Virus record (IMG/VR): IMGVR_UViG_3300028864_000014
Coordinates: 62,001 to 126,000 of that record
DNA length: 64,000 nt
Direction: 5' to 3' (one strand)
Made by a program: the position numbers and the translations under genes. Of this stretch, positions 4,716 to 63,515 are shown one piece after another. Within the stretch, counting starts at the first letter, position 1, and each line of letters opens with the position of its first letter. Under the pieces are notes generated by a model. That model did not search any database. It was not told the DNA's origin and saw nothing but the letters and a program-made list of their open reading frames with translations.

Positions 4716-4746
4716 CAAAGATAATACAATATTTTTAAATAACAAA
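4716..4746 (-). promoter_or_regulatory. Bacteroidota sigmaA-type promoter (-33 TTTG / -7 TATCTTTG)
   Basis: Minus strand TATCTTTG at 4723-4716 with TTTG at 4746-4743 (19 nt spacing), upstream of 4674. Confidence 0.75.
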
Positions 4747-4748
4747 AA

Positions 4749-5060
4749 CTAATTGAATATTTTTTTCAATTTCTTTTTTCTTAGCATTTTTATTCCACCA
4801 ATAATCTCTACATTATCAAACTTAAATTCTTCACGTTCATTTTTTTTAGAAACATACAAAGTACTATACATTACTAACAAAAAGTATTGTTCTTTGAAAA
4901 GTGGATGGTCTTTTTTTATTTTATTTTTCAATTGAAATGTTTTCAATTGAAATAAATATGTAATAAAAGCATCACTTTTTGAAGATAACTCAATAGGATT
5001 TTTATTTTTTATATGAAAATCAATATCCTTAATGAAATCATATAATTGATAATTTGACAT
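4749..5060 (-). CDS. hypothetical protein with RxxKL-type C-terminal tag
   Basis: Ends MLRKKKLKKIFN. Confidence 0.7.
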   Translation of the reverse strand: MSNYQLYDFIKDIDFHIKNKNPIELSSKSDAFITYLFQLKTFQLKNKIKKDHPLFKEQYFLLVMYSTLYVSKKNEREEFKFDNVEIIGGIKMLRKKKLKKIFN

Positions 5061-5065
5061 AATTT

Positions 5066-6268
5066 TTAATCTAAATAAATAGTAGGAACAGATGATAAAT
5101 AATACAGATTTAAATTTTGATTAATTAATATAGCATCTGATGGCTGATAGCCTAATTCTCCATCATTAAATACAACATCATTAAATAATCCACAAATAAA
5201 CAATCCATTGTTAATTGTTCCTCCTGACCAAAATCCATTCCACCAAGTTCCATTATTGAATGTTCCATTTTCCCATATTCCTTCTAACCAAGTTCCATTA
5301 TTAAATGTACCATTTAAATGAGTACCTCCATACCAAGTACCATTATTCCATGTTCCTCCTGACCAAATAGTTCTATTATGATTATCTGACAATGATGTTA
5401 AACCTGATTGAATATTCAATCCTGAATGAAATTCTCCTTGATAAAATATACCATCATGCCAAATAACAGAAGGGAAAGCCAATTCTGTTGTACCAGACAC
5501 AGGCCATGAACCAAATCTACTTCTAACATTAATATCTGTTTGATTAAATTCACCATTCCACCAATGACTAGCAGAAGAGCCCAATGATTGAACAACTTCA
5601 GTATTACCAATAAAATCTCCTCCATTAAATTTTCCATTCCACCATTCATACCCTTGAAATGTTCCATTTAAAAATGTTCCATTAACCCACTCACTATTAT
5701 AAAATATACCATCTTTAAATATACTATCATTAACATAATAGCTCAACCAAACAGCATTTCTAAAAATACCATTATTAAATATACCAGTTTCCCATCTAGT
5801 ATGATAATAAATAATCTCACTATTTAACATTTGATCCCAAGTATCAACGTCTTTATCAGTACCTTGATCAATTCCTGGTCCGAAATATCCATTAAAAAAT
5901 TCGCCTCTTCTCCAAATACCACGTCTAAATTGTGAATATATTGGATTATTTTTTTCTATAATTCTTATATTTCTTTGTAATAATTGATTAGTATCAAAGC
6001 GATAAGAATAGAATTTTCCATTTTTCCATTCACCATCTTCCCATATTCCAGAATACCAAGTACCATCTTCCCATTCTCCTGCTTTCCAAGTACCTGAATA
6101 CCAAACCAATCCATAATCATCCTGTCCTATTATTGCATTCTCAATAATTGCATTTAATAACCAAATATATTTTCTTTTGATAATATCTGGTGTTAATCCA
6201 TCAATCATAACACAATTTAATAATGCATCAGAATAATTGGTTATATTATAAATTTTTGTTGTTGCCAT
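5066..6268 (-). CDS. (W/F)xxGx pentapeptide-repeat protein, probable beta-solenoid virion protein
   Basis: Many repeats such as WYSGTWKAGEWEDGTW and FNNGTWLEGIWENGTF; preceded by a TTTTTTTATATATAG motif. Confidence 0.7.
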   Translation of the reverse strand: MATTKIYNITNYSDALLNCVMIDGLTPDIIKRKYIWLLNAIIENAIIGQDDYGLVWYSGTWKAGEWEDGTWYSGIWEDGEWKNGKFYSYRFDTNQLLQRNIRIIEKNNPIYSQFRRGIWRRGEFFNGYFGPGIDQGTDKDVDTWDQMLNSEIIYYHTRWETGIFNNGIFRNAVWLSYYVNDSIFKDGIFYNSEWVNGTFLNGTFQGYEWWNGKFNGGDFIGNTEVVQSLGSSASHWWNGEFNQTDINVRSRFGSWPVSGTTELAFPSVIWHDGIFYQGEFHSGLNIQSGLTSLSDNHNRTIWSGGTWNNGTWYGGTHLNGTFNNGTWLEGIWENGTFNNGTWWNGFWSGGTINNGLFICGLFNDVVFNDGELGYQPSDAILINQNLNLYYLSSVPTIYLD

Positions 6269-6274
6269 ATTAAC

Positions 6275-6289
6275 CTATATATAAAAAAA
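6275..6289 (-). promoter_or_regulatory. candidate phage late promoter T(n)ATATATA
   Basis: TTTTTTTATATATAG 6 nt upstream of ATG 6268; the same motif precedes many structural and CTS-like genes. Confidence 0.55.
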
Positions 6290-6353
6290 CTTCATTTAAA
6301 ATAAAACATATAAAAAAATAATGACTAAAAAATAAAAATTAAATTGAATTAAT

Positions 6354-6710
6354 ATGGATATGAAAAAAACAATATTTCTTGATATTGATGGTACATTATT
6401 TAAACACAAAGGTAATTTATCAAATATACTATTTGAAGAGTCTGAAATTTTACCAGGAGTTATTGAAAAAATAAATAAATGGAATTCAGATGGACACAAA
6501 ATAATATTAACTACTGGAAGAACAGAATCTATGAGAAAAAGAACAGATGAACAATTACAAAAAAATGGAATATTTTATGATCAATTAATAATGGGATTAA
6601 CAAGAGGAGAAAGAATAATTATAAATGACAAGAAGCCAGACAATGACATGATTACTGCATCTGCTGTTGAAATAAATAGAAATGTAGGCTTAATAAATAT
6701 TAATATTTGA
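6354..6710 (+). CDS. HAD-superfamily phosphatase-like protein
   Basis: IFLDIDGTL motif I, LTTGR motif II, and YDQLIMG...INDK. Confidence 0.8.
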   Translation: MDMKKTIFLDIDGTLFKHKGNLSNILFEESEILPGVIEKINKWNSDGHKIILTTGRTESMRKRTDEQLQKNGIFYDQLIMGLTRGERIIINDKKPDNDMITASAVEINRNVGLININI

Positions 6711-7088: not shown

Positions 7089-9434
7089 TTAGGCTATTGC
7101 ATCTACTATCGTGGTTGCATCAAATACTAATTTATTAACTCCTGTTGAACTAACAAATAAAATTTTTGTGTATGTAAGATAAACATAAGTTGATATTGTA
7201 AAATTAGAATGTGAAAAATTATTATTAACCTGATTTGACTGAAAATTACTACCAATAACATTAAACATAAAGTTACATCCGATATTATTTCCAGTAAAAT
7301 TATTTCCAACAGTATTTTGTGTATATTCATTTCCTATTATATTAACACTAAAATCACTTCCGATTACATTAGTAACAAAATTGTCTTCTATTGAGTTAGC
7401 TTGAAAATTCGAAATAATGTTATTATTACTGAAATTGGTTCCAATTCTATTACCTGCAAAATTGTCACCTGATATGATATTAATTTGAAATCTATCACCA
7501 ACAATATTAGACGTAAAATTATTATCTATAGTATTCTGATAAAATCCATTACCAATATCATTTGAATCAAATCCAGATTTAATATTATTCTGATAAAATC
7601 CATTTTTAATTGAATTAGAATTAAAAAGATTTGTGATTATATTATATCGAAAATTATACCCAATAATATTAATTTTAAAATTGTCACCAATTTTATTATA
7701 TTGAAAATTATCACAAACAATATTATTAATAAAATTAATACCAATAATATTATGATGATGCAGATTATTCATTATATTATATTGAAAATTAGACTTAATA
7801 ATATTGTTAAAAAATTGAATTTTAATATTATTATACATAAATGTTGCTCCAATTGAATTAGTATAAAAAGAATATTTTATCACATTAAGTACAAAATTCT
7901 TTGAAATTATATTTTTTGAAAAATTTTGTCCAATTGAATTTTGACTAAATCCATAACCAATTGAATTACCTTCATTAATATTTCCGTTATAATAACCAAA
8001 ATAATTACCAATTGAATTATTATTAAAATTGGATCCAATTGAGTTGTGCATAAACCCACTTCCAATTGAGTTATTATAAAAACTTTCACCAATTGAGTTA
8101 TTAGTAAAATTAAATCCTATCGTGTTACCATAAAATATATTTCCAAAAATAACACTAGTACAATTATTAAGAATATTATTATATCCATTATAAGATCCTA
8201 TATGATTATTATAAATATTACTAGTATATGACACAAACATAGCATAGTCTGAATATAATGTTGTACAAGGTATATTTGAGTTTATGTTATTATAATTAAT
8301 TGCAGTTGTACTCACATAACTTAAATTATTCCATTCAAATAATTTCCAAACATTGTCATTATCAGAAGATGGATTAATTCCAGTCACTCCACTATTTAAA
8401 CAAACATAAATAGTTACTCCACTATATAAAACTACATCATTATTGTTATATGTAGTTGAAGGATCCCAAATATTAGTAACATTTATTTGCCATCTACGAA
8501 ACTTAACATTTCTAAAATCAAAAGGAATATTATTATTCTGAAGAGTATCAATTCTTCTATAAATATAACCCTTTGTACAACCAGGTACAATTGCTTGATC
8601 ACTTACTGAATTATAATAAATTATATCTTTAGGATATAAAACTGAATAAGCTTCAGGTTTTAATGTGTTTGAGCTACTTGCAGTTACTAATAAAGGTTCT
8701 GTTATTCCACTATTGATATCAGAAGTACCTACAATAGTATGAACTGTCTGATAATCTGTAATCGAATAAGTTCTATTAATATTTAATCCATTAGAAAGGA
8801 TCAAAGCTCTCAAATCTGCATATAATATATTAGTGACACCTGATGTAGTATTTATTCCATTTATTCCATTTATTCCATTTATTCCTGATGTTCCATTTGT
8901 ACCACTCGCACCTGATGATCCATTAGTTCCATTTGATCCATTAGTTCCATTTATACCTGATGTACCAGTTTGACCATTTATACCTGATGTACCAGTTTGA
9001 CCATTTATACCTGATGTACCTGATGACCCAGCTGGTCCAATTGGAATATTAGTATATGACAGCACTCCATCAACATCTGAAACTAATATTTTACCTACTC
9101 CATATCCAGGAGATAAACAAGTAATACCAGATTCAATATTTATATTTTTAGTGTGTAGAGTATCAGTATCTGAGTCAAAATATAAAGTATCAGTTGTTGT
9201 ACCAGAATCTTCAAAAAAATACATTTGTTTTATTGTATTTTCTCCTACTCTCATCCACACATTTTCATCCGTTTCATTAAGAAAAAACTCTCCGATATAA
9301 ATATCAGTTGTTCTCCATGATGGTAGCAATGTATGATCATCATGTGATCCTCCCAACGCTGGAATTGTTGCAACATCACCAGAAACAGTATTTCGTTTTA
9401 CAATAACTCTACTATATTTTTCAACTTTAGACAT
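7089..9434 (-). CDS. tail fibre-like protein (GxxG low-complexity stalk plus N-x-IG-x-NF beta-helix repeats)
   Basis: GSSGTSGINGQTG repeats, then a long run of NNxIGxNF repeats. Likely start is ATG 9434 (MSKVEK) rather than TTG 9476. Confidence 0.7.
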   Translation of the reverse strand: MSKVEKYSRVIVKRNTVSGDVATIPALGGSHDDHTLLPSWRTTDIYIGEFFLNETDENVWMRVGENTIKQMYFFEDSGTTTDTLYFDSDTDTLHTKNINIESGITCLSPGYGVGKILVSDVDGVLSYTNIPIGPAGSSGTSGINGQTGTSGINGQTGTSGINGTNGSNGTNGSSGASGTNGTSGINGINGINGINTTSGVTNILYADLRALILSNGLNINRTYSITDYQTVHTIVGTSDINSGITEPLLVTASSSNTLKPEAYSVLYPKDIIYYNSVSDQAIVPGCTKGYIYRRIDTLQNNNIPFDFRNVKFRRWQINVTNIWDPSTTYNNNDVVLYSGVTIYVCLNSGVTGINPSSDNDNVWKLFEWNNLSYVSTTAINYNNINSNIPCTTLYSDYAMFVSYTSNIYNNHIGSYNGYNNILNNCTSVIFGNIFYGNTIGFNFTNNSIGESFYNNSIGSGFMHNSIGSNFNNNSIGNYFGYYNGNINEGNSIGYGFSQNSIGQNFSKNIISKNFVLNVIKYSFYTNSIGATFMYNNIKIQFFNNIIKSNFQYNIMNNLHHHNIIGINFINNIVCDNFQYNKIGDNFKINIIGYNFRYNIITNLFNSNSIKNGFYQNNIKSGFDSNDIGNGFYQNTIDNNFTSNIVGDRFQINIISGDNFAGNRIGTNFSNNNIISNFQANSIEDNFVTNVIGSDFSVNIIGNEYTQNTVGNNFTGNNIGCNFMFNVIGSNFQSNQVNNNFSHSNFTISTYVYLTYTKILFVSSTGVNKLVFDATTIVDAIA
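8851..9020. repeat. in-frame tandem repeats (9, 18 and 27 bp units)
   Basis: TTTATTCCA about 4 copies (8851-8886), GATCCATTAGTTCCATTT x2 (8917-8952), CCATTTATACCTGATGTACCAGTTTGA about 2.7 copies (8947-9020). Confidence 0.9.
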
Positions 9435-9490: not shown

Positions 9491-11644
9491 TTATATATTA
9501 GAATTTTTACCACCGTCAATTAATGTATATAATAACGGAGGATTATTTGGTCCAGGTAAACTAACATCTAATCCAGAATCCATAATATCTCCTAATTCAT
9601 TTCCTTTCATACCATTCAAAGAATCTTCATCACCTCCATTCAAAACATTCCAATAAATTTCAATGGTAGAACCAGACAATACTGTTAAAGGAACTGGTAA
9701 TCTTGATTTTCTATCAGAACCAATATATACCAATTCAATTGTAGAAAAATATAAAAGAGGATCAGCATTTTTATCAATATTAGATCCTAAATTGAATAAC
9801 TTTAATATGAATTCATTATTTTCATTTTCATATAATAGTCCAGTAGCGTACAATCTAAAATACTTATCTAATACTAAAATATCAGCATATGATTTACAGA
9901 TATATTTTCTTTCATTATCATTTTTTTGAATATACCAATCATATGGAACATTCATATAAACTTGATATAATATATCTGATATGTTTAATAAACCATCTAT
10001 ATTTTGAATTGATATTATATCAGTAGCAGGATAAAAAGGAAATGATGAAGGTTTTTCAATTATCATTTCTGTATCATGAACACTATAAATTAAAGACTTA
10101 CCATTAATTATTACTCCTGATATATTAATATATGTATATTCTTTAAATTTATTTAATAATCCTCCTTGTGCATAAATAATTCTTATTCTATTATTATCAG
10201 TATATTGATATGTGAATCCAGTAAGTAAAAAATTATTATAAAGAGAATAATCTTCTTTGAATCCATTAGGTTCTAGTCTATTCAAATTATCGAATAACTT
10301 ATAACTAACATATTGATTATATGTAATAAAAGAATGATCAATCCAATTATTATTATCATTTAACGATATTTTCAATCCATCATAATCAAAATATTTATCA
10401 TATTCACAAATTTTTGCAGTAAATCTTATATCTAAATAATTTGTATTATAAGTTCTAACTTTTATATCATAATAATCAGAATATGGTGAGTTAAAAGACA
10501 ATTTATCAAGAGCATCTTCCCAACTTATTCCAACATTTAGATTTTCCACCGAAAATGAATTGGGTTTTAAATCATTCATTATTCTATTTGGAATAGTTTC
10601 TTCTAAAATTAAATAACCTGATTTAATATCCTTTATAAAGGTATTTAATTTTAGAATACTTATTGAATTTAAATCTAATGTATCACCACTATAAATATTT
10701 AACTCAATATAATCTCCTATCACACAATCAAAATATTGTGAATAAGGAATAGCAGTAAATCCTTTTAATATATTATTACTAATTTTATTGGTAATACCAG
10801 TAAATTCTGAACTAATAGTTAATCCTGATCTAATAATATATGAATTGTGATGATAATCTATTTTAGCAATTTCTGAAGATAAATACAAACTATTAATATC
10901 AAAATCTATTTCGTTATATTTTTCTGCATTAGTATTTAATTGTTTTCTTGCAACATCATAATCTGTAAAAAAAATTTTAGATGTACTTCCAGAATCCGAA
11001 TATAATCTTTCTAAATCATATTTAACTAAATTTTTAAGTATAAAAGATTTACCTTCAATAAAATATTTAACTTCTCCTGTAATTGGAAAAGTAGAACCTG
11101 CATTAGATAAAAAGAATTGTTTATCAGAATTATTACCTAATTTAACACTACAACTAAATTTATCAGATTTTTCTCTATTATTTAAAACATTAGAATTTAT
11201 TAAAAAATTTTTATTTGTTACAGTATAAATATCATTTTCTGACTCACTACCTATATTTTGATTTTTTAACAAAATTAAATGTCCTGGCTTGATATTAACT
11301 CCATTAATTTGAGTCCATTGTTTAGATATGTCAATGTGGGTATCTGCTGCTACATCTACAAATATTATATTTTTAAGTACTCTATCAATAACATCATATT
11401 CATTATACATATTAACAATAGAATAACCATCTCCTGTTAATAGATTTTCTTTATTATAAATATCATCTAAACTATTAATATATGTATATGTGACTCCTGT
11501 TAAATATTTATTAAATCTAAAATAAATATCTCCAACTGCAATAAATTTATCTTCATCATATTTAACAGAACGAGTTTTCTGAACAAATGTTCCATCATTT
11601 TGTTTAATCCAATCAAATTTTCTAGATTTTCTATTTTTTTGCAT
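9491..11644 (-). CDS. putative virion structural (tail/baseplate-associated) protein
   Basis: VDVAADTHIDI...INGVNIKPGHLILLKNQ...ENDIY resembles a recurrent phage tail-protein motif (IDGV.L..GDRVLVKNQ...ENGIY); preceded by TTTTTAATATATAC. Confidence 0.6.
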   Translation of the reverse strand: MQKNRKSRKFDWIKQNDGTFVQKTRSVKYDEDKFIAVGDIYFRFNKYLTGVTYTYINSLDDIYNKENLLTGDGYSIVNMYNEYDVIDRVLKNIIFVDVAADTHIDISKQWTQINGVNIKPGHLILLKNQNIGSESENDIYTVTNKNFLINSNVLNNREKSDKFSCSVKLGNNSDKQFFLSNAGSTFPITGEVKYFIEGKSFILKNLVKYDLERLYSDSGSTSKIFFTDYDVARKQLNTNAEKYNEIDFDINSLYLSSEIAKIDYHHNSYIIRSGLTISSEFTGITNKISNNILKGFTAIPYSQYFDCVIGDYIELNIYSGDTLDLNSISILKLNTFIKDIKSGYLILEETIPNRIMNDLKPNSFSVENLNVGISWEDALDKLSFNSPYSDYYDIKVRTYNTNYLDIRFTAKICEYDKYFDYDGLKISLNDNNNWIDHSFITYNQYVSYKLFDNLNRLEPNGFKEDYSLYNNFLLTGFTYQYTDNNRIRIIYAQGGLLNKFKEYTYINISGVIINGKSLIYSVHDTEMIIEKPSSFPFYPATDIISIQNIDGLLNISDILYQVYMNVPYDWYIQKNDNERKYICKSYADILVLDKYFRLYATGLLYENENNEFILKLFNLGSNIDKNADPLLYFSTIELVYIGSDRKSRLPVPLTVLSGSTIEIYWNVLNGGDEDSLNGMKGNELGDIMDSGLDVSLPGPNNPPLLYTLIDGGKNSNI

Positions 11645-11695
11645 CTATAAACTTTATTTCTTTAGTTGTATATATTAAAAATAAATAAGGTAATT

Positions 11696-12549: not shown

Positions 12550-12629
12550 AATAATTTCATTTTTTCTTAATATATAACTATTTAAGAAAAAAGTTTATAT
12601 TTCAAATGTTCATATCTAAATCAAATATA

Positions 12630-15475: not shown

Positions 15476-15490
15476 TTTTTTTATATATAT
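15476..15490 (+). promoter_or_regulatory. candidate phage late promoter
   Basis: TTTTTTTATATATAT 18 nt upstream of GTG 15509. Confidence 0.55.
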
Positions 15491-15508
15491 AAGAAAAAAC
15501 CAATTTCT

Positions 15509-20971: not shown

Positions 20972-21023
20972 CTATTTTAAGAACTTGTTTTTATTTATAT
21001 ATAAAAAAAAATCAAAACAGTTT

Positions 21024-24262: not shown

Positions 24263-24607
24263 TTATATATTAAATTTATTAGTTGATATTAATAAATCCA
24301 AATCATCTCTTGTTATTATTGACCAATTATCCTTATTATTCCAATCATAATCTGGATATTTGTCTAATATATAATCTAATCTACGCTCTGCTTGTTTTGT
24401 TGTAAAAAAACAAGCTGTGTTATTAATATTATAAATTGTATTTGAATTAAATTTATTAATATCAATAGAAGATATTACATCACTAGATTCATATGGAAGA
24501 TTCATCAATATCAATTTATCACCTTTAGTTGGTCTATTCAAAATTAATAAATATTTTTGTTTATTTTCTTCTTTCTTTTTAAATATGTTAAATTTTTCTA
24601 CTATCAT
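24263..24607 (-). CDS. CTS-like/KFNI-tagged small protein, paralog of 24610..24948
   Basis: MIVEKFNIFK...YLLILNRPTKGD...STNKFNI. Confidence 0.75.
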   Translation of the reverse strand: MIVEKFNIFKKKEENKQKYLLILNRPTKGDKLILMNLPYESSDVISSIDINKFNSNTIYNINNTACFFTTKQAERRLDYILDKYPDYDWNNKDNWSIITRDDLDLLISTNKFNI

Positions 24608-25395: not shown

Positions 25396-25486
25396 ATTAA
25401 ATTTGTTTATAAGTACAATTTACAAAATTATAAAAAATACTCACAAAATATTAATAAATTGCATATTATTATATTTTTTTATATTA

Positions 25487-26343: not shown

Positions 26344-26455
26344 GTAGGTATATATATAATTATTTTTCAAAAAATATAAACAATTTAAATATTTTTCTAT
26401 AATATAAAAAGTATAATTTTTTCAAATAATTATACAATATTTCAAATTAAATTGT

Positions 26456-26463
26456 TATCTTTG
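26456..26463 (+). promoter_or_regulatory. Bacteroidota-type -7 box TATCTTTG
   Basis: Intergenic, 40 nt upstream of the SbcCD fusion gene. Confidence 0.6.
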
Positions 26464-31407: not shown

Positions 31408-31596
31408 TATTATTACTCAGTTATTTTTTATAACTGTATATATTAATTATAAAAACCTTGTTTTTAGCTTAATTTTTAAGTATTTAATGATTTTCACTGA
31501 TTAATATATACATATCATAAAATATAAAATATGTATTTTTTATTTTGTTTATAATCAGATAGTTAAATATATTATTGAAATATTATTATAATAAGT

Positions 31597-31627
31597 TTTG
31601 ATATTAGGAAAAAATGTTGTAAATTTG
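31597..31627 (+). promoter_or_regulatory. Bacteroidota sigmaA-type promoter (-33 TTTG / -7 TAAATTTG)
   Basis: TTTG at 31597-31600 and TAAATTTG at 31620-31627 (19 nt spacing), upstream of clpS. Confidence 0.75.
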
Positions 31628-35188: not shown

Positions 35189-35203
35189 TTTTTTTATATA
35201 TAA
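35189..35203 (+). promoter_or_regulatory. candidate phage late promoter
   Basis: TTTTTTTATATATAA upstream of 35248. Confidence 0.5.
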
Positions 35204-37706: not shown

Positions 37707-37720
37707 TTTTTTATATATAG
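37707..37720 (+). promoter_or_regulatory. candidate phage late promoter
   Basis: TTTTTTATATATAG 22 nt upstream of ATG 37743. Confidence 0.55.
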
Positions 37721-37742
37721 AAAAAAATATAATAACGACAAT

Positions 37743-39629: not shown

Positions 39630-39640
39630 ATTAATTAATA

Positions 39641-40906: not shown

Positions 40907-40922
40907 AATAATAAAATAATAA

Positions 40923-44302: not shown

Positions 44303-44406
44303 GTTTTTTATAATATATATATAATATCACATAATAATGTGCTATCATTTATATATTTTATATGTTAATTAACACATTTTATATTTTTATTATTATTTTA
44401 TTGTAT

Positions 44407-44705: not shown

Positions 44706-44730
44706 TATTGTTTTTTTTTGTATATATAAA

Positions 44731-45243
44731 TTATTCTGAATCTTTTATAAATTGAGAATAAGTTAAATCTAAAATTACTTCTCTATCAAAAACGTTAACT
44801 GATACTTTAGATTTTTGCTTAGAATTATCCAATGTCTTAATGATTCCTTTGAACGTACTAAAAGGTCCATCTATTATTTTAACTTTTTCTTTGATATAAT
44901 ACATATCACCATTAACAAAAACTTCTTCTGTTGTCTTTTTTTCAAGTAATCTATCAACTTCAGATTGTCTCAAAGGTTTTTTTAATACTCCTTGAACTCC
45001 ACTAATATATTTAATATATCCTTCAACATTATCTATTGATTCACATTCAATAAAAATATAGCCAGGAATATTTATTTTTTCAATGTTAATTTTTTTGCCA
45101 TTCCTTAATTGCTGTGTTTTTACTGATGGTACTAAAATATTAGAAATTATATTTTCAATAGGATTAACTTTCAATTCAGTTTCTATTAATTCTTTGACTT
45201 TTTTCTCTTTGCCATTAGCAACTTTTATTACATAGTATTTCAT
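44731..45243 (-). CDS. nusG: transcription termination/antitermination factor NusG
   Basis: NGN domain (YYVIKVANGKEKKV...PGYIFIE) and KOW domain (VKIIDGPFSTFKG...VSVNVFDRE). Confidence 0.9.
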   Translation of the reverse strand: MKYYVIKVANGKEKKVKELIETELKVNPIENIISNILVPSVKTQQLRNGKKINIEKINIPGYIFIECESIDNVEGYIKYISGVQGVLKKPLRQSEVDRLLEKKTTEEVFVNGDMYYIKEKVKIIDGPFSTFKGIIKTLDNSKQKSKVSVNVFDREVILDLTYSQFIKDSE

Positions 45244-45802: not shown

Positions 45803-45865
45803 ATGTGTTATATATAAAACTTTTTATATTATTTTTTATATATTATAAAAAATGAATAATATTCA

Positions 45866-46293: not shown

Positions 46294-46381
46294 ATCTGAA
46301 TAATATAAAAAAAATCATGAAAAATTTTATTTTTTCAAGATTTTTTTGTATCTTTGCATTTGAAATAAATTAAAAAATATT

Positions 46382-46621: not shown

Positions 46622-46845
46622 AGAGAATTAATTTTTTTTATTGTAAATTAAGTTGAATATTATTCAACTTTTTAAAAAATTTTGATATATAATTATAGTA
46701 TTTCTTACCCAAGTATATATTAATTAACATCTTTCAGATATTTCTATTTTTTATAAGTAACTTATTATCATATACTTATAAGTATCTGATTATTAGATAT
46801 TAAAAAAATAATTAGAAATAATTAAAAACAATTAAATATAAATAA

Positions 46846-48900: not shown

Positions 48901-48963
48901 TTATTTAAAAAACCTTAATTATTGTATTTTTAACTGTTTATTTTTTACTATTACAAATATAAT

Positions 48964-49144: not shown

Positions 49145-49233
49145 ATTTTCATTTAATATTTTTATTATTAGATTTTTACTCATAATTATATACCTTATAT
49201 ATAAATATTTTTTATCTATTTTTCTATATATTT

Positions 49234-53119: not shown

Positions 53120-53214
53120 TTTATATAAAATATGTTTTTTATTACTATTAATTAAATTATATATAAATAAAACTTTTTTTATTTTTTCTTTTATAATTAA
53201 AAAAACAAATTAAT

Positions 53215-54427: not shown

Positions 54428-54503
54428 AATTTTTCTTTTTTTGTATATATAAAAATATAACTAACTATTTTTTATTTTCTTCTATTATATCATTTTTTAT
54501 TTG

Positions 54504-54511
54504 TATCTTTG
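54504..54511 (+). promoter_or_regulatory. Bacteroidota-type -7 box TATCTTTG
   Basis: 27 nt upstream of ATG 54539, at the head of the run of RxxKL-tagged genes. Confidence 0.65.
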
Positions 54512-56225: not shown

Positions 56226-56227
56226 AT

Positions 56228-56881: not shown

Positions 56882-56884
56882 ATA

Positions 56885-57879: not shown

Positions 57880-57909
57880 AAACATTAAACAAATTAAAAA
57901 TATAATATT

Positions 57910-58604: not shown

Positions 58605-58875
58605 TAAAAAATATAAACAAGGAGATGAAGTTGTATGTATTAATAATGATGGAGGTTATGATAAATATTTAACAATTGGAAAAAAATATAAAATTCATTA
58701 TATTTATAAAGGAAAATTAACCAATTTAGATCATTTTAGGATAAAATCTGACAAAATAAATTCATTTTTTATAAGTCCATTAGGAATAATTTTTTTATCA
58801 CCAAATGAGTTTAAAATTAAGAAAAGAAAAGAAAAATTAGAAAAAATCAATAAATTAATTTTTAATGATATTTAA
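58597..58875 (+). CDS. GDEVVCI (SH3-like) protein with RxxKL tag
   Basis: QGDEVVCINN...LTIGKKY...RKEKLEKI. Confidence 0.75.
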   Translation: MTDKKYKQGDEVVCINNDGGYDKYLTIGKKYKIHYIYKGKLTNLDHFRIKSDKINSFFISPLGIIFLSPNEFKIKKRKEKLEKINKLIFNDI

Positions 58876-59113
58876 TCAAGGAGATGAAGTTGTTTGTATT
58901 CAAAATGTTGGTTATACTGATTTTTTAACAATTAGCAAATCATATAAAGTTTTACTTTCCTACTATGGAAGTGTAACAGAAACTGAACATATACGTGTTC
59001 AGAAAGATGATAAAAATGGTCATGTTGATATATTTAGTAGTAGATTTATATCTATCAAAGAATTCAAAAAAATAAAAAGAAAAGAAAAACTAAATATATT
59101 AAATCTAATATAA
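58865..59113 (+). CDS. GDEVVCI (SH3-like) protein with RxxKL tag
   Basis: QGDEVVCIQN...LTISKSY...RKEKLNIL. Confidence 0.75.
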   Translation: MIFNQGDEVVCIQNVGYTDFLTISKSYKVLLSYYGSVTETEHIRVQKDDKNGHVDIFSSRFISIKEFKKIKRKEKLNILNLI

Positions 59114-59141
59114 CATATAAATAATAAAAATAAAATAGGAT

Positions 59142-59363
59142 ATGAAAATTTTAAGAAAAAAAGACACTTTTAAGAAAGTACCTGACGCAAGCATTAATGA
59201 TGTTGTAGCTATCAAATCTTATATTGAACAAGGATGGAAGCATTGTTCAAAAAAAGAATATAAAGATTTTTTCAAAACTGCAGTTTCTGAGAAATTAGTT
59301 GAAAAGAAAATTGAAAAAGAAGAAATTAAAGAAAAAAAGAAAGAAAAGAAGCACGGCAAATGA
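59142..59363 (+). CDS. basic hypothetical protein
   Basis: 73 aa, Lys/Glu-rich. Confidence 0.6.
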   Translation: MKILRKKDTFKKVPDASINDVVAIKSYIEQGWKHCSKKEYKDFFKTAVSEKLVEKKIEKEEIKEKKKEKKHGK

Positions 59364-59794
59364 TTTTAGATATAATCAAATATGATGATTCTAACTCAGG
59401 AAAATTAAGAAAACTAAATGTAAATGTAAAAAAGGAAAATCCTTTTTTGCTTTCACTTATTAAAAATATGTTTGAAACTCTTAATTATCACAAATTTGAA
59501 TTTGGGTTATCTGCTCCACAAGTTGGACATAACTTAAATTTATTTGTTATTAATAATCCTGATTTAAAAGAAGTATTTATTAATCCAGAAATATATTTAG
59601 AAGGACTTTTTATTCAAAACAAAGAAAGATGTTTAAGCTTACCAAATTTAGAATTTCCTATAAATAGGAGATCAATTGTTAAGATTAAATATTATGATAT
59701 AAATTGGAATTATAAAATGTCTTCGTTTAAAGATTTAAATGCCATAGCTATTCAACATCAATTTGATCATATTAACGGAAAATTAATTATTTGA
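59360..59794 (+). CDS. def: peptide deformylase-like protein with degenerate active site
   Basis: GLSAPQVG, VFINPEI, ERCLS (canonical EGCLS) and QHQFDHING (canonical QHEMDHL.G). Confidence 0.85.
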   Translation: MILDIIKYDDSNSGKLRKLNVNVKKENPFLLSLIKNMFETLNYHKFEFGLSAPQVGHNLNLFVINNPDLKEVFINPEIYLEGLFIQNKERCLSLPNLEFPINRRSIVKIKYYDINWNYKMSSFKDLNAIAIQHQFDHINGKLII

Positions 59795-60177
59795 TGAATA
59801 TATTTAATAGAAAAAAAAGGGAATTAAAAAGGGAACTAAAATACAATGAACTGAACAAATTATTCAGGATTAAACATGGTATAATTTGTAATTGGAGGAT
59901 TAAAAAATATACTTTGCATCCAACTACAGTTGAAGGACTTGTTTTTGATGAAAAGTTTAATTCATTTTTTTTGAGAGAATATGGAATATTTCCACATTCC
60001 TTTAATGAGTTTGCTTGTATTAACTATTCCTTTGATCCAAAATTTGATAATTTTCCAGTTGATAAATTACAGGAATTATATAATAAAATTGAGTCTGTTT
60101 TTCCTGATCCATTTATTAAAATTAATAGATTAAAAAAATTAAAAAATATTAATTCTGTTAAATATGAAGAACGGTGA
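59791..60177 (+). CDS. hypothetical protein with RxxKL-type tag
   Basis: Ends INRLKKLKNINS. Confidence 0.7.
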   Translation: MMNIFNRKKRELKRELKYNELNKLFRIKHGIICNWRIKKYTLHPTTVEGLVFDEKFNSFFLREYGIFPHSFNEFACINYSFDPKFDNFPVDKLQELYNKIESVFPDPFIKINRLKKLKNINSVKYEER

Positions 60178-60394
60178 TAAAATTACTTATATTAGTAACG
60201 ATATTTGTGTTTTTGATAAATATAAAACATATACTATTATTAATATACACAATGATATTATAACATATGTGAGTTATCTTGATAATTATAAAAAGTTATG
60301 GTATATAGGTTGTAGTTATACTATGAATAAATTCATAACATATAATCAATATAGAAAATTAAAATTAAATAAAATTAATGAAAAAATATGTTAG
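60164..60394 (+). CDS. SH3-like small protein with RxxKL tag
   Basis: MKNGDKITYI...YRKLKLNKI. Confidence 0.7.
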   Translation: MKNGDKITYISNDICVFDKYKTYTIINIHNDIITYVSYLDNYKKLWYIGCSYTMNKFITYNQYRKLKLNKINEKIC

Positions 60395-60570
60395 TAAAAG
60401 AATTAATAGAAAAAATAGAAGAATTAAGAGTAATATATCCTAATATTGATGATATTGAAATTGGACCACTTTTTAATGGTGATTTAGTGATGATGATTAG
60501 TGATTTGACAATAGAAGAAGGCTCAGGATGGGAAACTGACGATGCAATTGGCATTATTTGGAATTGTTAA
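60388..60570 (+). CDS. hypothetical protein
   Basis: 60 aa acidic ORF (MLVKELIEKIEEL). Confidence 0.6.
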   Translation: MLVKELIEKIEELRVIYPNIDDIEIGPLFNGDLVMMISDLTIEEGSGWETDDAIGIIWNC

Positions 60571-60597
60571 GTTTTTATAAAAAATAATAAATATTAA

Positions 60598-60840
60598 ATG
60601 TTAGAAGAAATCATAAATAACTATCCAGATGAAGGAATTTTATCTGCTGATGGATTGGATGATGCAGTAATTGGATTAGAAATGAATTCAATGAGGTTAA
60701 TATATTCAGTATCTAAATGTATTGAAATTTTTATCAATGATGGAATGACAGAAGAAGAAGCATTAGAATTCTTTGAATTTAATACAGCAGGATCTTATAT
60801 GGGTGAACACACTCCAATATGGTGCTACGATGATTTTTAA
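60598..60840 (+). CDS. conserved phage hypothetical protein
   Basis: ADGLDDAVIG...YS..KC...GMTEEEALEFFEFN..GSYMGEHTPI is a family I recognise from environmental phages. Confidence 0.75.
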   Translation: MLEEIINNYPDEGILSADGLDDAVIGLEMNSMRLIYSVSKCIEIFINDGMTEEEALEFFEFNTAGSYMGEHTPIWCYDDF

Positions 60841-60900
60841 TTGATATAAAAATAAATAATTTTTTTATATCAATTATTTTCATTATATTTGTAAAAAAAT

Positions 60901-61101
60901 ATGAAAGATAAAAAATCAGATGAAATATATTCAAATTGGGTCAAAGAATCAGGAATAAAAGATTTAACTGGTAACCAATCAAAATTTGTCAAAATGATTA
61001 TATCAAATAGAAAAATTATCTGTGAAATCGGAAGTTTTAATAAAGTTTTTGTTAGCATTTATAAATATTTGAAAAATAATCGTGAAAAATTAGAAGATTA
61101 A
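60901..61101 (+). CDS. hypothetical protein
   Basis: 66 aa ORF. Confidence 0.55.
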   Translation: MKDKKSDEIYSNWVKESGIKDLTGNQSKFVKMIISNRKIICEIGSFNKVFVSIYKYLKNNREKLED

Positions 61102-61103
61102 AT

Positions 61104-61361
61104 ATGAAATCAATACTTTACAAAAAAGGTGAAAAATTTGTTTGTATAGATAATACATCTAGATATACTGGAGTAGAATTAGGCTATTCTTCTTTGACGT
61201 TATTGAAAATTGGCGGTGTTTACACATTTCGTGATATTAATAGTTATGGCGAAATGAATTTTTTGGAACTACGCGGATATAGTTTCAGAAAGCAAAGGTT
61301 TGTGAAATATTCAGAGTTAAGAAAGATAAAATTAGAAAAATTAAATACTATAAACATATAA
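61104..61361 (+). CDS. SH3-like small protein with RxxKL tag
   Basis: KKGEKFVCIDN...LRKIKLEKL. Confidence 0.75.
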   Translation: MKSILYKKGEKFVCIDNTSRYTGVELGYSSLTLLKIGGVYTFRDINSYGEMNFLELRGYSFRKQRFVKYSELRKIKLEKLNTINI

Positions 61362-61363
61362 TC

Positions 61364-62251
61364 ATGAGTCTAAAAGCATATGACGGTATGATGACCAGAA
61401 ATGGTTTAGCATACATACAAGAAGAAATCTTAAAAAGAATTGATAGATTTGAAGATGCATCACAAAATGAATTAGCAAAATGTTATGCTAAAGATATTAT
61501 ATTACATGTAGATGAAAAATGTGACATTATTCATCAAATGGAATATTTATCAATTAATGATAGTGAAGAATTAAAAAATAAAATAAAAGAAATTAGTATA
61601 AAAGAAGATACTACTTTGATGTCTTATTTATTTCAATCAGGTAAAATATTATCAAAAAGTCAATATAAAAATGATTTTATGGTTGATCTTAGTTTATCAA
61701 TTGATTGTAGAGATGATAAAATACTAATTTTTCCAAATATAAATGTAGGCGAGCATAGAACAATCCTTTTAGAATTTCTAAATGATTGGTATTGTCAAAA
61801 CCAATCTGATCCAGATGAAAATGTAAAAGAAGATGAATGGGATGAAAGAGAAAAAGATTGGTATGTATTTAATGAACATAAAGGATTATCAATGAAGATT
61901 ATGATATTTGATACAAATAATTATTCTAAAAATTTAAATGAACATTTTAGAGGTGAAATATTATATCAAAAAATACTCGAAAATATTCCTTCAGATGATA
62001 TTAGAAAAAGGAAAATAGTAACTAATATTTTAATTAGTGAGAAATTAAAAGATAATGATGATTATTCAACTGTTTGGAATATATTGGGAGAGTTAAAGAA
62101 AGATGACAACTCAGAAATAACTGAATATATAAACTCACATGATATTCAATTATTTAAAATTGATAAAGAATTTCTTGATACTGAATTATTAAAACCTAAA
62201 ACAGAACTTGATGAGTATATAAAAACTCATAATATTGAATTAAAAAAATAA
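61364..62251 (+). CDS. hypothetical protein
   Basis: 295 aa ORF. Confidence 0.7.
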   Translation: MSLKAYDGMMTRNGLAYIQEEILKRIDRFEDASQNELAKCYAKDIILHVDEKCDIIHQMEYLSINDSEELKNKIKEISIKEDTTLMSYLFQSGKILSKSQYKNDFMVDLSLSIDCRDDKILIFPNINVGEHRTILLEFLNDWYCQNQSDPDENVKEDEWDEREKDWYVFNEHKGLSMKIMIFDTNNYSKNLNEHFRGEILYQKILENIPSDDIRKRKIVTNILISEKLKDNDDYSTVWNILGELKKDDNSEITEYINSHDIQLFKIDKEFLDTELLKPKTELDEYIKTHNIELKK

Positions 62252-62257
62252 CAATTT

Positions 62258-62294
62258 AAATCCATCTATTTAAGATGGATTTTTTTATATATAA
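62258..62294 (+). terminator. intrinsic terminator whose T-run is also the start of a late-promoter-like motif
   Basis: AAATCCATCT-ATTTA-AGATGGATTT, continuing into TTTTTTTATATATAA (62280-62294) before 62318. Confidence 0.7.
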
Positions 62295-62317
62295 TAATAA
62301 ATAAAAAATAATTTATT

Positions 62318-62647
62318 ATGACAGTATATAGTTTTGATGAATATTATGGCAAGAAATATCAAGTAGATAGATATTATGATAATATGATGAGAGTAGTTGA
62401 TGATTATGTAAATACTAATGATGAATTTAGAAAAAACCACAAAGTTCAAAATTCACCTTATTTTGTTATAAAATCAGATAGTATACATAAAAGTTCACTT
62501 AAACCAGGAGGATATAATATAAATTACACTTTGAAAAAAAATTATCAAAAGGGAACAATAAATATAACTGATGAAGAATATAATGATTTAGTTGAATATA
62601 TGAAAGATACAGAATTATATAAATCTACAAAAAAATTCAATTTATAA
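62318..62647 (+). CDS. CTS-like/KFNL-tagged small protein
   Basis: Starts MTVYSFDEY; ends STKKFNL. Confidence 0.7.
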   Translation: MTVYSFDEYYGKKYQVDRYYDNMMRVVDDYVNTNDEFRKNHKVQNSPYFVIKSDSIHKSSLKPGGYNINYTLKKNYQKGTINITDEEYNDLVEYMKDTELYKSTKKFNL

Positions 62648-63447
62648 TGAGCAAAAAAGTCAAAGATTGGAATTCATTTATTTTAGAACAACAGAGTATA
62701 GAAAACTCTATATATTCAATATTTGATATTGATGATAATTTACTTATCATGAATACTCCTTTACACTTTCAACATTTTGAAAATGGTAAATGGATAAATA
62801 AAGATATATCAATTCAAGATTTTTCTAAAATAAGACTTGAATATCCAGATAATTATATTGATAATAATGAATGGAAATCAGACACTAAATATACATTTTC
62901 TGAATTTGGAGACAACGGTCCAAGATTAGATAATTCACTTGTTGATGATATTAAAAAATCAATAAAGAATAAAAATTTTGGTCCATCATGGGAGTCATTT
63001 TTAACAACTCTAAAAGAAGGTAGATTATTTGCTATCATTACCACAAGAGGACATGAACCTAATACTATACATTCATCAGTAAGATATATAATAGATAATG
63101 TATTAGACATAGATGATAAAAATATAATGATAACAAATATAGAAAAATATAATAAATTATTCAAATTTGAATCAACTGATAAAATAGAAAATTATTTAGA
63201 CTGCTGTTATTTTATTGGATTAATGTCTCAAGCATTCAAAGATGAGTTTTATTTTACTCCAACAATGAAAACAAGACATTTAGCTATACAAGATGCAACT
63301 AACAAATTTTCAAATTACGTTAAAGAAATTTCTCCTGGTACAATAGATTCATTCATTAGTAATGAGAAATCATTAGACTTTCCTGAATTTTATAGCATTT
63401 CTAATTCTGTCACCAATAAAACAGAACAAGTAAAAGTTAAAATATAA
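62647..63447 (+). CDS. HAD-like protein with CTS-like N-terminus
   Basis: Starts MSKKVKDWNSFILE; IFDIDDNL (motif I) and AIITTRGH (motif II). Confidence 0.65.
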   Translation: MSKKVKDWNSFILEQQSIENSIYSIFDIDDNLLIMNTPLHFQHFENGKWINKDISIQDFSKIRLEYPDNYIDNNEWKSDTKYTFSEFGDNGPRLDNSLVDDIKKSIKNKNFGPSWESFLTTLKEGRLFAIITTRGHEPNTIHSSVRYIIDNVLDIDDKNIMITNIEKYNKLFKFESTDKIENYLDCCYFIGLMSQAFKDEFYFTPTMKTRHLAIQDATNKFSNYVKEISPGTIDSFISNEKSLDFPEFYSISNSVTNKTEQVKVKI

Positions 63448-63507
63448 TAAATATCAAATATTTAATAAATATATCTTGAATAATTTTTTTATTCAAGATA
63501 TTTTTTT

Positions 63508-63515
63508 TATCTTTG
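63508..63515 (+). promoter_or_regulatory. Bacteroidota-type -7 box TATCTTTG
   Basis: 26 nt upstream of the ligA ATG at 63542. Confidence 0.65.

What the first reader, a model, noticed from the sequence alone, without database searches (positions are those of the whole stretch)
4716..63515. Two promoter classes that partition with the two protein-tag classes
Class 1 (seen): TAnnTTTG at 4723-4716(-), 25430-25423(-), 26456, 31620, 46349, 48961-48954(-), 54504 and 63508. Two have TTTG exactly 19 nt upstream (4746, 31597). This is the established Bacteroidota sigmaA -7/-33 consensus. It heads replication and host-takeover genes (sbcCD, clpS, ligA) and the RxxKL-rich run from 54539. Class 2 (seen): T(n)(A)ATATATA at 6289(-), 11681(-), 15476, 20994, 26360(-), 31446(-), 35189, 37707, 44730(-), 45819(-), 54455(-) and 62280. 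It lies about 5-45 nt before structural genes and CTS-like genes. Inference: class 1 is early (host RNAP) and class 2 is a phage late promoter analogous to T4 TATAAATA. RxxKL proteins would then be largely early and CTS/KFN proteins late. The match is a tendency and I did not test it statistically.
Basis: partly seen in the sequence, partly recalled or inferred. Interest (0 to 1): 0.72.

Follow-up and report, generated by a model that had tools for sequence, protein, structure and literature searches.

The report
Two promoter classes in a huge phage
This piece of an uncultivated giant Bacteroidota phage carries two real upstream signals, a host-type promoter (TTTG-N19-20-TAnnTTTG) before early-looking operons and a phage-specific T-run+(TA)4 box before tail and other genes; the box is conserved across the largest known phages, so gene timing in them can be predicted from sequence, though timing itself is untested.

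Summary

**Class 2, TT[T/A]ATATATA**
- 74 sites lie in the 235-kb contig, and 66 are intergenic although only 9.4% of the contig is intergenic.
- The box sits a median 20 nt before the ATG and points toward the downstream gene.
- It is abundant in divergent gaps and almost absent from convergent ones.
- It is 4-fold depleted inside genes.
- It is conserved before one orthologous gene in 14 relatives, down to 30% protein identity, including the 735-kb phage LR756501.

**Class 1** is the Bacteroidota sigma-A -33/-7 promoter. The specific form TATCTTTG is strongly enriched. The loose TAnnTTTG is only weakly enriched.

**What each class heads**
- Class 1 heads long operons of small proteins and the SbcCD, ClpS/ClpA-like and ligase genes.
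- Class 2 heads the tail sheath, the baseplate hub, eight tail-fibre paralogues and the KFN family, plus several non-structural genes.
- RKxKL-tailed proteins fall 52:5 in class 1 units, which is robust. KFN proteins fall 5:37, which is only moderately robust.

**Machinery**
- No gp55 homologue was found.
- An ECF-type sigma factor is encoded and co-occurs with the box in relatives. It is my candidate reader of class 2.

Timing and the sigma-box link are inferred. No RNA data were available.

The parts
4716..4723 (-). Class 1 box TATCTTTG with TTTG 19 nt upstream. Heads the 4282-4674 gene and two genes downstream.
12622..12629 (-). Class 1 box TATATTTG, 72 nt before the 12277-12549 gene.
25423..25430 (-). 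Class 1 box TAATTTTG, 27 nt before 24964-25395. It heads three KFN-tailed genes and so is an exception to the partition.
26456..26463 (+). Class 1 box TATCTTTG, 40 nt before the fused SbcCD gene (26504-30256).
31620..31627 (+). Class 1 box TAAATTTG with TTTG 19 nt upstream. Heads the ClpS (31694-31987) and ClpA/B-like (32277-34811) operon.
46349..46356 (+). Class 1 box TATCTTTG followed by a terminator hairpin at 46393-46416. Candidate transcript of about 55 nt, not a protein gene.
48954..48961 (-). Class 1 box TATATTTG, 53 nt before 48058-48900.
54504..54511 (+). Class 1 box TATCTTTG, 27 nt before 54539. Heads the long + strand operon that holds 9 RKxKL-tailed proteins, SIR2 and peptide deformylase.
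60884..60891 (+). Class 1 box TATATTTG, 9 nt before 60901-61101.
63508..63515 (+). Class 1 box TATCTTTG, 26 nt before the NAD-dependent DNA ligase gene (63542 onward).
1346..1355 (+). Class 2 box TTAATATATA, 12 nt before 1368-1913. The DnaJ homologue (1954-2961) follows in the same unit.
6276..6285 (-). Class 2 box TTTATATATA, 7 nt before the 400-aa gene 5066-6268.
11669..11678 (-). Class 2 box TTAATATATA, 24 nt before the 717-aa gene 9491-11644. The tail-fibre paralogue 7089-9434 lies downstream.
15480..15493 (.). Class 2 box TTTATATATATAAG between divergent genes. It lies 19 nt before the 1417-aa gene (15509-19762, +) and 43 nt before 15085-15438 (-).
20994..21005 (.). Palindromic class 2 box TTTATATATAAA serving two divergent genes. 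It lies 20 nt before the RuvC-like gene (21024-21737, +) and 24 nt before 20720-20971 (-).
24264..24273 (-). Class 2 box TTAATATATA overlapping the KFNI-stop end of the upstream gene, 19 nt before 23771-24244.
26349..26360 (-). Class 2 box ATTATATATATA, 5-7 nt before the KFN gene 25921-26343.
31437..31446 (-). Class 2 box TTAATATATA, 29 nt before 31147-31407.
35193..35202 (+). Class 2 box TTTATATATA, 45 nt before the glycoside-hydrolase-15-like gene 35248-36351.
37710..37721 (.). Class 2 box, 23 nt before the 628-aa gene 37743-39629 (+) and 49 nt before 37045-37662 (-). A box is kept at the same distance before this gene's orthologues in 14 relatives.
44314..44325 (-). Class 2 box, 11-13 nt before the CTS-like gene 43793-44302.
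44721..44730 (-). Class 2 box TTTATATATA, 15 nt before the CTS-like gene 44445-44705.
45809..45818 (-). Class 2 box TTTATATATA, 6 nt before the CTS-like gene 45332-45802. The NusG-like gene 44731-45243 follows downstream.
46714..46723 (-). Class 2 variant TTAATATATA, 92 nt before 46415-46621. The distance is atypically long.
53156..53167 (.). Class 2 box between divergent genes 52499-53119 (-, 38 nt) and 53215-53529 (+, 49 nt).
54444..54453 (-). Class 2 box TTTATATATA, 16 nt before the CTS-like gene 54023-54427. It shares a 111-nt gap with the class 1 box at 54504, which faces the other way.
62284..62293 (+). Class 2 box TTTATATATA just after a hairpin, 24 nt before the KFN gene 62318-62647. 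It interrupts a class 1 operon.
44731..45243 (-). Phage NusG-like transcription factor gene, inside a class 2 unit.

Best explanation
The window belongs to a fragment of a huge phage of the Mahaphage clade that infects Bacteroidota. The fragment is about one third of the genome by CheckV. The phage uses two kinds of promoter.

Class 1 is (TTTG)-N19-20-TA(H)(H)TTTG, most often TATCTTTG. It is the host primary-sigma (sigma-A Bfr type) promoter. Unmodified host RNA polymerase reads it. It drives long operons of small proteins, many with an RKxKL tail, and the nucleic-acid and proteostasis genes (SbcCD, ligase, ClpS/ClpA-like, ClpP). I infer that these are the early genes.

Class 2 is a -10-only box: a T-run, then [T/A]ATATATA, then a non-T base, with no -35 element. 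A conserved A lies 6 nt after the box and is the likely start site, which gives leaders of about 10-20 nt. The palindromic (TA)4 core lets a single box serve two divergent genes. I infer that host core polymerase reads class 2 only when it carries a phage-made specificity factor. The best candidate is the phage's ECF-type sigma (208 aa, contig 20848-21474, outside the window). I infer that class 2 switches on middle and late genes: the tail sheath, the baseplate hub operon, tail fibres, the MK.LK.FE...KFN[IL] family and a set of enzymes.

Shown: the boxes exist, are non-random, directional and positioned, are avoided inside genes, are conserved across relatives, and partition by gene content.
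Inferred: that the boxes are promoters, their timing, and which sigma reads class 2.
For: Non-randomness of the boxes:
- Enrichment over AT-matched simulations.
- Intergenic restriction: 66 of 74 class 2 sites.
- Unbiased word searches recover exactly these two motifs and no third.

Class 2 architecture:
- The logo shows no -35 element, a non-T base after the box, and an A six nt after the box in 43 of 51 sites.
- The box ends a median 20 nt before the ATG (IQR 15-25.5).
- Class 1 ends a median 36 nt before the ATG. That gives a leader of about 31 nt, against an average of 33 nt in Flavobacterium johnsoniae (PMC6847099).

Direction and placement:
- Class 2 sits 22 with and 5 against the downstream gene, and 29 in divergent against 1 in convergent gaps.
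- TATATATA occurs 10 times inside genes, against 39 +/- 6 in synonymous-codon shuffles.

Class 1 identity:
- The -33 TTTG sits at spacer 18-20 in 9 of 38 sites, against 7 of 440 coding controls (p=4e-7).
- The two variable positions are G in only 4 of 65 intergenic sites, which fits TAHHTTTG (PMC6847099).

Host:
- There is no Shine-Dalgarno sequence, and A peaks at -15 to -11 before starts.
- The relatives of more than 634 kb are predicted Bacteroidetes phages (PMC7162821).

Conservation:
- The box lies 20-23 nt before the orthologue of 37743-39629 in 10 IMG/VR relatives and in LR756501, LR756502, LR745206 and LR756504.
- In LR756501, 76 of 80 TTTATATATA sites are intergenic.
- Unit class agrees between 60 orthologue pairs: 23/1/5/6, p=0.0017.

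Gene content:
- Class 2 units hold the sheath (phrog_34521, 4e-80), the hub and the tail fibres.
- Class 1 units hold SbcCD, ClpS/ClpA-like, ligase and thymidine-related genes.

Sigma factor:
- It is ECF-type (PF04542 and PF08281; PDB SigW 7e-12).
- It is the only sigma in LR756501.
- Orthologues exist in four relatives that have box enrichment, and none in LR756500, which has no enrichment (17 sites against 20 control).
- No Rpb1 or Rpb2 polymerase domains were found in four complete relatives.

Precedent:
- phiEco32 gp36, a two-domain phage sigma, uses a single -10-like consensus (PMC12276001).
Against: - There are no transcript data. No RNA run was listed, so start sites and timing are untested.
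- ECF sigmas normally need a -35 element and class 2 shows none.
- The sigma-box co-occurrence rests on six genomes. The 501-kb relative G001 is enriched for the box but gave only a weak, stop-containing sigma match. That contig is 70% complete.
- The contig is a fragment, so another factor may lie in the missing part.
- Class 2 also precedes recombination and replication-type genes in LR756501 (RecA-like and DnaB-like) and many enzymes here, so it is not purely 'late structural'.
- Class 1 sites are poorly conserved in position between relatives.
- 27 genes could not be assigned to any unit.
Confidence: 0.6

Rival explanations
1. Class 2 is a phage-specific promoter, but something other than the ECF-type sigma reads it. 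The reader could be an unrecognised gp55-like or gp33-like factor, or a very divergent phage RNA polymerase, encoded in the missing two thirds of the genome or among the many unannotated genes. The ECF sigma would then serve a small separate regulon.
For: - Class 2 has no -35 element, which is unlike ECF promoters.
- The contig is about 33% complete.
- Most proteins have no Pfam or PHROG match.
- Sigma orthologues in three relatives share a different upstream word, TTAACGG(C/A)A, which could be an autoregulated promoter of their own.
- G001 is enriched for the box without a clear sigma orthologue.
Against: - No gp55 family match in the contig or in the complete LR756501.
- No Rpb1 or Rpb2 domains in four complete relatives.
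- The sigma is the only recognisable promoter-specificity factor, and its presence tracks box enrichment in five of six genomes.
Confidence: 0.25
2. Both motifs are promoters but do not define early and late classes. The split with gene content and protein tags would simply reflect genome modules and tandem paralogue arrays that carried their promoters along when they duplicated.
For: - Tagged genes sit in arrays and operons. Counting each transcription unit once weakens the KFN and N-tag associations (p=0.03-0.48; permutation 0.05-0.09).
- Class 2 heads many non-structural genes.
- There are no expression data.
Against: - The RKxKL association survives the per-unit and permutation tests (p=3e-4 and <5e-5).
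- The tags span several BLAST-separable families.
- All ten recognisable virion genes are in class 2 units and none is in a class 1 unit.
- Class 2 cannot be read as a sigma-A -7 element, so a second specificity, and hence a switch, is required.
- Unit class is conserved between orthologues at about 40% identity.
Confidence: 0.1
3. The (TA)4 box is not a promoter. It would be an mRNA-level or DNA-level signal next to gene starts, such as an AU-rich translation enhancer in an organism without Shine-Dalgarno sequences, an RNA processing site, or an easily melted structural element.
For: - The box lies close to the ATG (median 20 nt), in the zone where A/U-rich leaders aid initiation in Bacteroidota (PMC6847099).
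- No transcription start data exist.
Against: - Genes behind class 1 promoters lack the box in their leaders. When both motifs share a gap, the box nearly always belongs to the divergent neighbour.
- One palindromic box serves two divergent genes at about 20-24 nt each. That fits a -10 element but not a shared leader.
- There is 1 box in convergent gaps against 29 in divergent gaps.
- The box follows terminator hairpins in relatives, forming terminator-promoter cassettes.
- Hairpins are not generally enriched upstream of the box, so the T-run is not a terminator tail.
Confidence: 0.05

Closest known systems
Bacteroidota primary-sigma (sigma-A Bfr) promoters, -33 TTTG / -7 TAnnTTTG (refined to TAHHTTTG in Flavobacterium johnsoniae; PMC6847099)
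   Same: - Class 1 has the same -7 word and almost never G at the two variable positions.
- TTTG or TTG sits at a 19-20 nt spacer in about a quarter of sites.
- The region between the elements is AT-rich.
- Inferred leaders are about 30 nt.
- Translation-start context is A-rich with no Shine-Dalgarno sequence.
   Different: - The phage strongly prefers one form, TATCTTTG(T/C)A.
- Many sites replace the -33 TTTG with a T7 run plus ATATCAA.
- Recognition by the host holoenzyme was not tested, and the host species is unknown.
Phage T4 late promoters (TATAAATA at -10, read by gp55 with gp33 and the gp45 clamp)
   Same: - Both are -10-only, AT-rich 8-bp boxes with no -35 element.
- The likely start lies about 6 nt after the box.
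- Leaders are short.
- Both sit before virion genes and before a RuvC/endonuclease-VII-type resolvase.
   Different: - The box is (TA)4 with an obligatory T-run, not TATAAATA.
- TATAAATA is at most mildly enriched in intergenic DNA here (35 of 160 sites).
- No gp55 family match in this contig or in a complete relative.
- Dependence on gp33 and gp45 was not examined.
Phage phiEco32 middle/late promoters read by the phage sigma gp36 (single consensus AATGTA centred at -11.5; PMC12276001)
   Same: - A phage-encoded two-domain sigma-family protein is paired with promoters that show only one conserved -10-like element.
- Early genes are left to the host primary sigma.
   Different: - The consensus differs and the host phylum differs.
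- No gp79-like co-factor has been identified.
- Homology between this sigma and gp36 was not tested.
- The sigma-box link here is correlative only.

Membership tests
Bacteroidota sigma-A (-33/-7) promoter | The -7 element TAnnTTTG lies upstream of genes and points toward them | tested here: met
   - 65 intergenic sites.
- 29 point with and 6 against the downstream gene in co-directional gaps. For TATCTTTG the split is 13 to 0.
- TATCTTTG is found before 15 genes against 0.4-0.7 expected.
Bacteroidota sigma-A (-33/-7) promoter | No G at the two variable positions (TAHHTTTG; PMC6847099) | tested here: met
   61 of 65 intergenic sites have no G at those positions.
Bacteroidota sigma-A (-33/-7) promoter | -33 TTTG about 19-21 nt upstream of the -7 element | tested here: met
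   - TTTG at spacer 18-20 in 9 of 38 sites, against 7 of 440 coding-region controls (p=3.7e-7).
- The TTG spacer histogram peaks at 19-20.
- Only a minority of sites carry it, as also reported for F. johnsoniae (PMC6847099).
Bacteroidota sigma-A (-33/-7) promoter | Transcription starts 4-5 nt after the -7 element and is made by host sigma-A holoenzyme | not testable with these tools
   No RNA run was listed. The phage is uncultivated.
T4-type late transcription (gp55 system) | A -10-only promoter with consensus TATAAATA | tested here: not met
   - The -10-only architecture is present, but the word is T-run+[T/A]ATATATA.
- TATAAATA is at most mildly enriched: 35 of 160 sites are intergenic, against 66 of 74 for the class 2 box.
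T4-type late transcription (gp55 system) | A gp55-family late sigma is encoded by the phage | tested here: not met
   - phrog_234 and phrog_12791 (identified with T4 gp55 itself) give no match in the contig.
- phrog_234 gives no match in the complete 735-kb relative either.
- Caveat: the contig is a fragment and very remote homologues could be missed.
T4-type late transcription (gp55 system) | The gp33 co-activator and the gp45 sliding clamp are required | not tested
   I did not search for them.
Phage-sigma-directed middle/late promoters (phiEco32 gp36 type) | The phage encodes a sigma-70-family protein with sigma-2 and sigma-4 domains | tested here: met
   - 208-aa protein at contig 20848-21474.
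- PF04542, PF08281 and PF04545; PF04542 at 1.4e-9.
- PDB ECF sigmas SigW, RpoE and SigH at 7e-12 to 1e-8.
- phrog_1740 at 3e-23.
Phage-sigma-directed middle/late promoters (phiEco32 gp36 type) | The sigma and its promoter word occur together across related genomes | tested here: inconclusive
   - Sigma orthologues and box enrichment are both present in LR756501, LR756502, LR745206 and LR756504.
- Both are absent in LR756500.
- G001 is enriched for the box, but its sigma match is weak and the contig is 70% complete.
- Six genomes only.
Phage-sigma-directed middle/late promoters (phiEco32 gp36 type) | The sigma directs initiation from the box | not testable with these tools
   This needs in vitro transcription or genetics.

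The most novel reading that the evidence does not exclude
The T-run+(TA)4 box is the shared middle/late promoter of the whole group of >600-kb Bacteroidota 'Mahaphages'. A phage ECF-type sigma would read it with no -35 contact, which would be a recognition mode not described for that sigma group. The terminal peptide motifs that follow the promoter split would then be functional fate tags. The RKxKL tail would mark early proteins, for example for clearance by the phage's own ClpS/ClpA-like/ClpP set. The MK.LK.FE / KFN ends would mark late proteins destined for the virion.
Probability: 0.15. Interest if true: 0.8.

Novelty: new member of a known kind. Interest (0 to 1): 0.55.

Why it matters
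Huge phages of 0.5-0.7 Mb are known only from metagenomes, and their gene programmes cannot yet be measured. Two short sequence words split about 93% of the genes in this contig into transcription units with different gene content. One of these words is conserved down to 30% protein identity in the largest phage genomes known. Together they give a sequence-only way to predict temporal class for hundreds of unannotated genes. They also give defined templates and a candidate sigma factor for a direct biochemical test, and they offer orthogonal promoter parts for Bacteroidota. The link to conserved N- and C-terminal peptide motifs points to protein families whose role could now be tested, for example as early host-takeover or late virion cargo proteins.

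Tried and rejected
- **RNA evidence.** A search for RNA runs with 37650-40950 listed none. The DNA holders are peat metagenomes. I therefore did not use read laying.
- **Structure of the 628-aa class 2 gene.** AlphaFold2 with an 8-sequence alignment gave pLDDT 39, which is unusable, so no fold search was run.
- **Naming class 2-headed proteins.**
  - Sequence searches against the PDB gave nothing for 37743-39629 and only weak hits (E 0.003-0.25) for 5066-6268 and the 463-aa gene at contig 141016.
  - The protein-atlas look-ups gave only weak leads: lectin-like for 37743-39629 and beta-helix-like for 5066-6268.
  - PHROGs and Pfam leave most class 2-headed proteins unnamed.
- **KFNI-stop as a coding shadow of the class 2 box.** I tested whether AAA TTT AAT ATA TAA explains the C-terminal motif. 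Rejected: only 3 of 42 such ends encode the box.
- **T-run as a terminator tail.** Rejected: hairpins are no more frequent upstream of class 2 boxes than in random intergenic DNA (8% against 6%).
- **A third promoter class.** Word enrichment in upstream regions gave only the two known motifs plus a repeated terminator word, AACTGAGT.
- **Class 1 conservation at the SbcCD locus.** Uninformative, because gene order differs between relatives.
- **T7-type polymerase search (PF00940).** The control rang nowhere, so this result says nothing.
- **First shuffle script.** It timed out and I replaced it with Markov simulations.

Full report
**What the window is**

The 64-kb window is bases 62001-126000 of a single 235,318-bp viral contig with 24% G+C.
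- IMG/VR and CheckV rate the contig as linear and about 33% complete.
- It recurs in many peat metagenomes.
- Its proteins match only the uncultured huge phages LR756501 (735 kb), LR756502, LR745206, LR756504 and LR756500. The genomes above 634 kb belong to the 'Mahaphage' clade and were predicted to infect Bacteroidetes (PMC7162821).
- Gene starts have no Shine-Dalgarno sequence. They show an A-rich stretch that peaks at -15 to -11, which is the Bacteroidetes signature (PMC6847099).
- My 377 gene calls agree with the genes called on public assemblies of the same phage.

**Checking the observation**

Class 2 over the whole contig:
- TTTATATATA occurs 42 times, always in the 9.4% of the contig that is intergenic.
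- 31 genes have it within 60 nt upstream, against 1.5-3.4 expected in simulations trained on those same AT-rich upstream regions.
- TATATATA is the most intergenic-biased 8-mer in an unbiased scan.
TT[TA]ATATATA gives 74 sites, 66 of them intergenic. Single C or G substitutions in the core are not enriched.

Class 1:
- The loose word TAnnTTTG is barely enriched (34 genes against 16-19 expected).
- The specific forms are strongly enriched: TATCTTTG 15 against 0.4-0.7, and TTTG-N18-20-TAnnTTTG 9 against 0.5.
- ATCTTTG is the top G/C-containing word upstream of genes, and no third motif appears.

**Anatomy**

Class 2:
- The consensus is tTT[T/A]ATATATA followed by a non-T base, then an A-rich stretch. 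An A lies six bases after the box in 43 of 51 sites, and nothing is conserved near -35.
- The box ends a median 20 nt before the ATG (IQR 15-25.5).
- It points with the downstream gene 22 times and against it 5 times in co-directional gaps. It occurs 29 times in divergent gaps and once in convergent gaps of similar total length.
- The palindromic core lets one box serve two divergent genes, for example at 20994-21005 and 37710-21.
- Inside genes the core is four-fold rarer than in synonymous-codon shuffles (10 against 39 +/- 6). TAnnTTTG is not depleted in the same test.
- Upstream hairpins are not generally enriched, so the T-run is part of the signal and not a terminator tail.

Class 1:
- It has TTTG or TTG at a 19-20 nt spacer (9 of 38 against 7 of 440 controls, p=4e-7).
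- It almost never has G at the variable positions.
- It ends a median 36 nt before the ATG.
- All of this matches the published F. johnsoniae promoter and its leader length (PMC6847099).

**Conservation**

- The 628-aa gene at 37743 has orthologues in 10 IMG/VR contigs (66-87% identity) and in LR756501, LR756502, LR745206 and LR756504 (30-42% identity).
- In all 14 a T-run plus [T/A]ATATATA lies 20-23 nt before the start. In the distant four it follows a terminator hairpin.
- I fetched and gene-called the whole of LR756501. There, 76 of 80 TTTATATATA sites are intergenic although only 7.7% of that genome is intergenic.
- Among 60 reciprocal-best orthologue pairs, the class of the transcription unit agrees (23 class2/class2, 6 class1/class1, 6 discordant; p=0.0017).
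- Class 1 positions are less stable between relatives.

**What the classes drive**

I assigned each gene to the nearest upstream box on its strand. This gives 32 class 1 units and 71 class 2 units and covers 350 of 377 genes.

Class 1 units:
- They are long (up to 30 genes) and made of small proteins (median 97 aa).
- They include fused SbcCD, ClpS with a ClpA/B-like ATPase, NAD ligase, ClpP, SIR2, peptide deformylase, thioredoxin, NUDIX, MazG and radical-SAM genes.

Class 2 units:
- They hold every recognisable virion gene: the 1200-aa tail sheath (phrog_34521, 4e-80), the gp5-like hub operon and eight tail-fibre paralogues.
- They also hold a RuvC-like resolvase, Dam, DeoC, DnaJ, a NusG-like factor, an S1-domain protein, AAA ATPases and glycosyltransferases.
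- 'Structural late' is therefore too narrow a label for class 2.

**Protein tags**

| Tag | Proteins | In class 1 units | In class 2 units | Per-unit Fisher p | Label permutation p |
|---|---|---|---|---|---|
| C-terminal RKxKL tail | 61 | 52 | 5 | 3e-4 | <5e-5 |
| C-terminal KFN[IL] end | 42 | 5 | 37 | 0.03 | 0.053 |
| N-terminal M..LK.FE start | 47 | 8 | 39 | 0.48 | 0.087 |

- Thirty-two proteins carry both the KFN end and the N-terminal start.
- The tags span several BLAST-separable families.
It is inflated by operon and array structure.

**Machinery**

I identified the gp55 PHROG families with T4 gp55 itself. They give no match in the contig, and phrog_234 gives none in complete LR756501.
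- The contig instead encodes one ECF-type sigma with sigma-2 and sigma-4 domains.
- It is the only Sigma70_r2 hit in LR756501.
- It has orthologues at 38-42% identity in the four relatives that are enriched for the box. It has none in LR756500, which is not enriched (17 sites against 20 control).
- No Rpb1 or Rpb2 polymerase domains occur in four complete relatives.
- A phage two-domain sigma that uses a single -10-like element has a precedent in phiEco32 gp36 (PMC12276001).
- Jumbo phages without their own polymerase typically carry sigma factors (PMC7824862).

**Verdict**

- Class 1 as the host sigma-A promoter is well supported.
- Class 2 as a phage-specific, -10-only promoter conserved across the clade is well supported as a signal. 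It is plausibly, but not demonstrably, read through the ECF-type sigma.
- Early and late timing is inferred from gene content only.
- The T4 comparison holds for architecture, not for membership.
- This is a new member of a known kind of phage regulation. Its practical value is for annotating uncultivated huge phages.

Noticed in passing
window 46349-46416: The class 1 box at 46349 is followed about 35 nt later by a strong bidirectional terminator hairpin (46393-46416). It would therefore make only a transcript of about 55 nt, a possible small RNA, next to the 3' end of the minus-strand gene 46415-46621.
   Followed up: partly
contig 20848-21474 (L002:5848-6474), outside the window: The phage ECF-type sigma gene sits behind a 702-nt gap with no class 1 or class 2 box close to it. 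Its orthologues in LR756502, LR745206 and LR756504 share the word TTAACGG(C/A)A upstream. This may be a separate, possibly autoregulated, promoter.
   Followed up: partly
window 44731-45243 (-): A phage-encoded NusG-like protein (PF02357; phrog_6386 'transcription antiterminator', 1e-19) lies inside a class 2 unit. It has an orthologue in LR756501.
   Followed up: partly
window 54539-61361 and contig-wide (61 genes): The RKxKL motif sits 8-10 residues from the C-terminus of small proteins whose genes almost all overlap the next gene. The K codon lies a median 22 nt before the next ATG. The motif could be a protein tag or a translational-coupling sequence. The phage also encodes ClpS, a ClpA/B-like ATPase and ClpP.
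   Followed up: partly
whole contig, coding regions: TATATATA is four-fold depleted inside genes compared with synonymous-codon shuffles (10 against 39 +/- 6). TAnnTTTG is not depleted.
   Followed up: yes
window 26504-30256 (+): The SbcD-like nuclease (Metallophos) and the SbcC/Rad50-like ATPase are fused in one 1250-aa reading frame.
   Followed up: no
window 49196-49205 (-): A perfect TTTATATATA box lies 295 nt from the next called gene but has an ATG 13 nt downstream. This suggests a small gene that neither I nor the public gene calls annotated.
   Followed up: no
whole contig: CheckV rates the contig as about one third of a genome. Another sample holds a longer assembly of the same phage (243,438 bp, ERZ27250347), and a 68%-identical relative has a 501-kb contig. 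This is probably a phage of more than 500 kb.
   Followed up: partly
contig 216-222 kb (L011) and window 15509-19762: A tandem array of about 13 paralogous genes of 130-170 aa on the minus strand shares similarity with part of the 1417-aa class 2 protein in the window. Together they form a BLAST cluster of 20 members.
   Followed up: no
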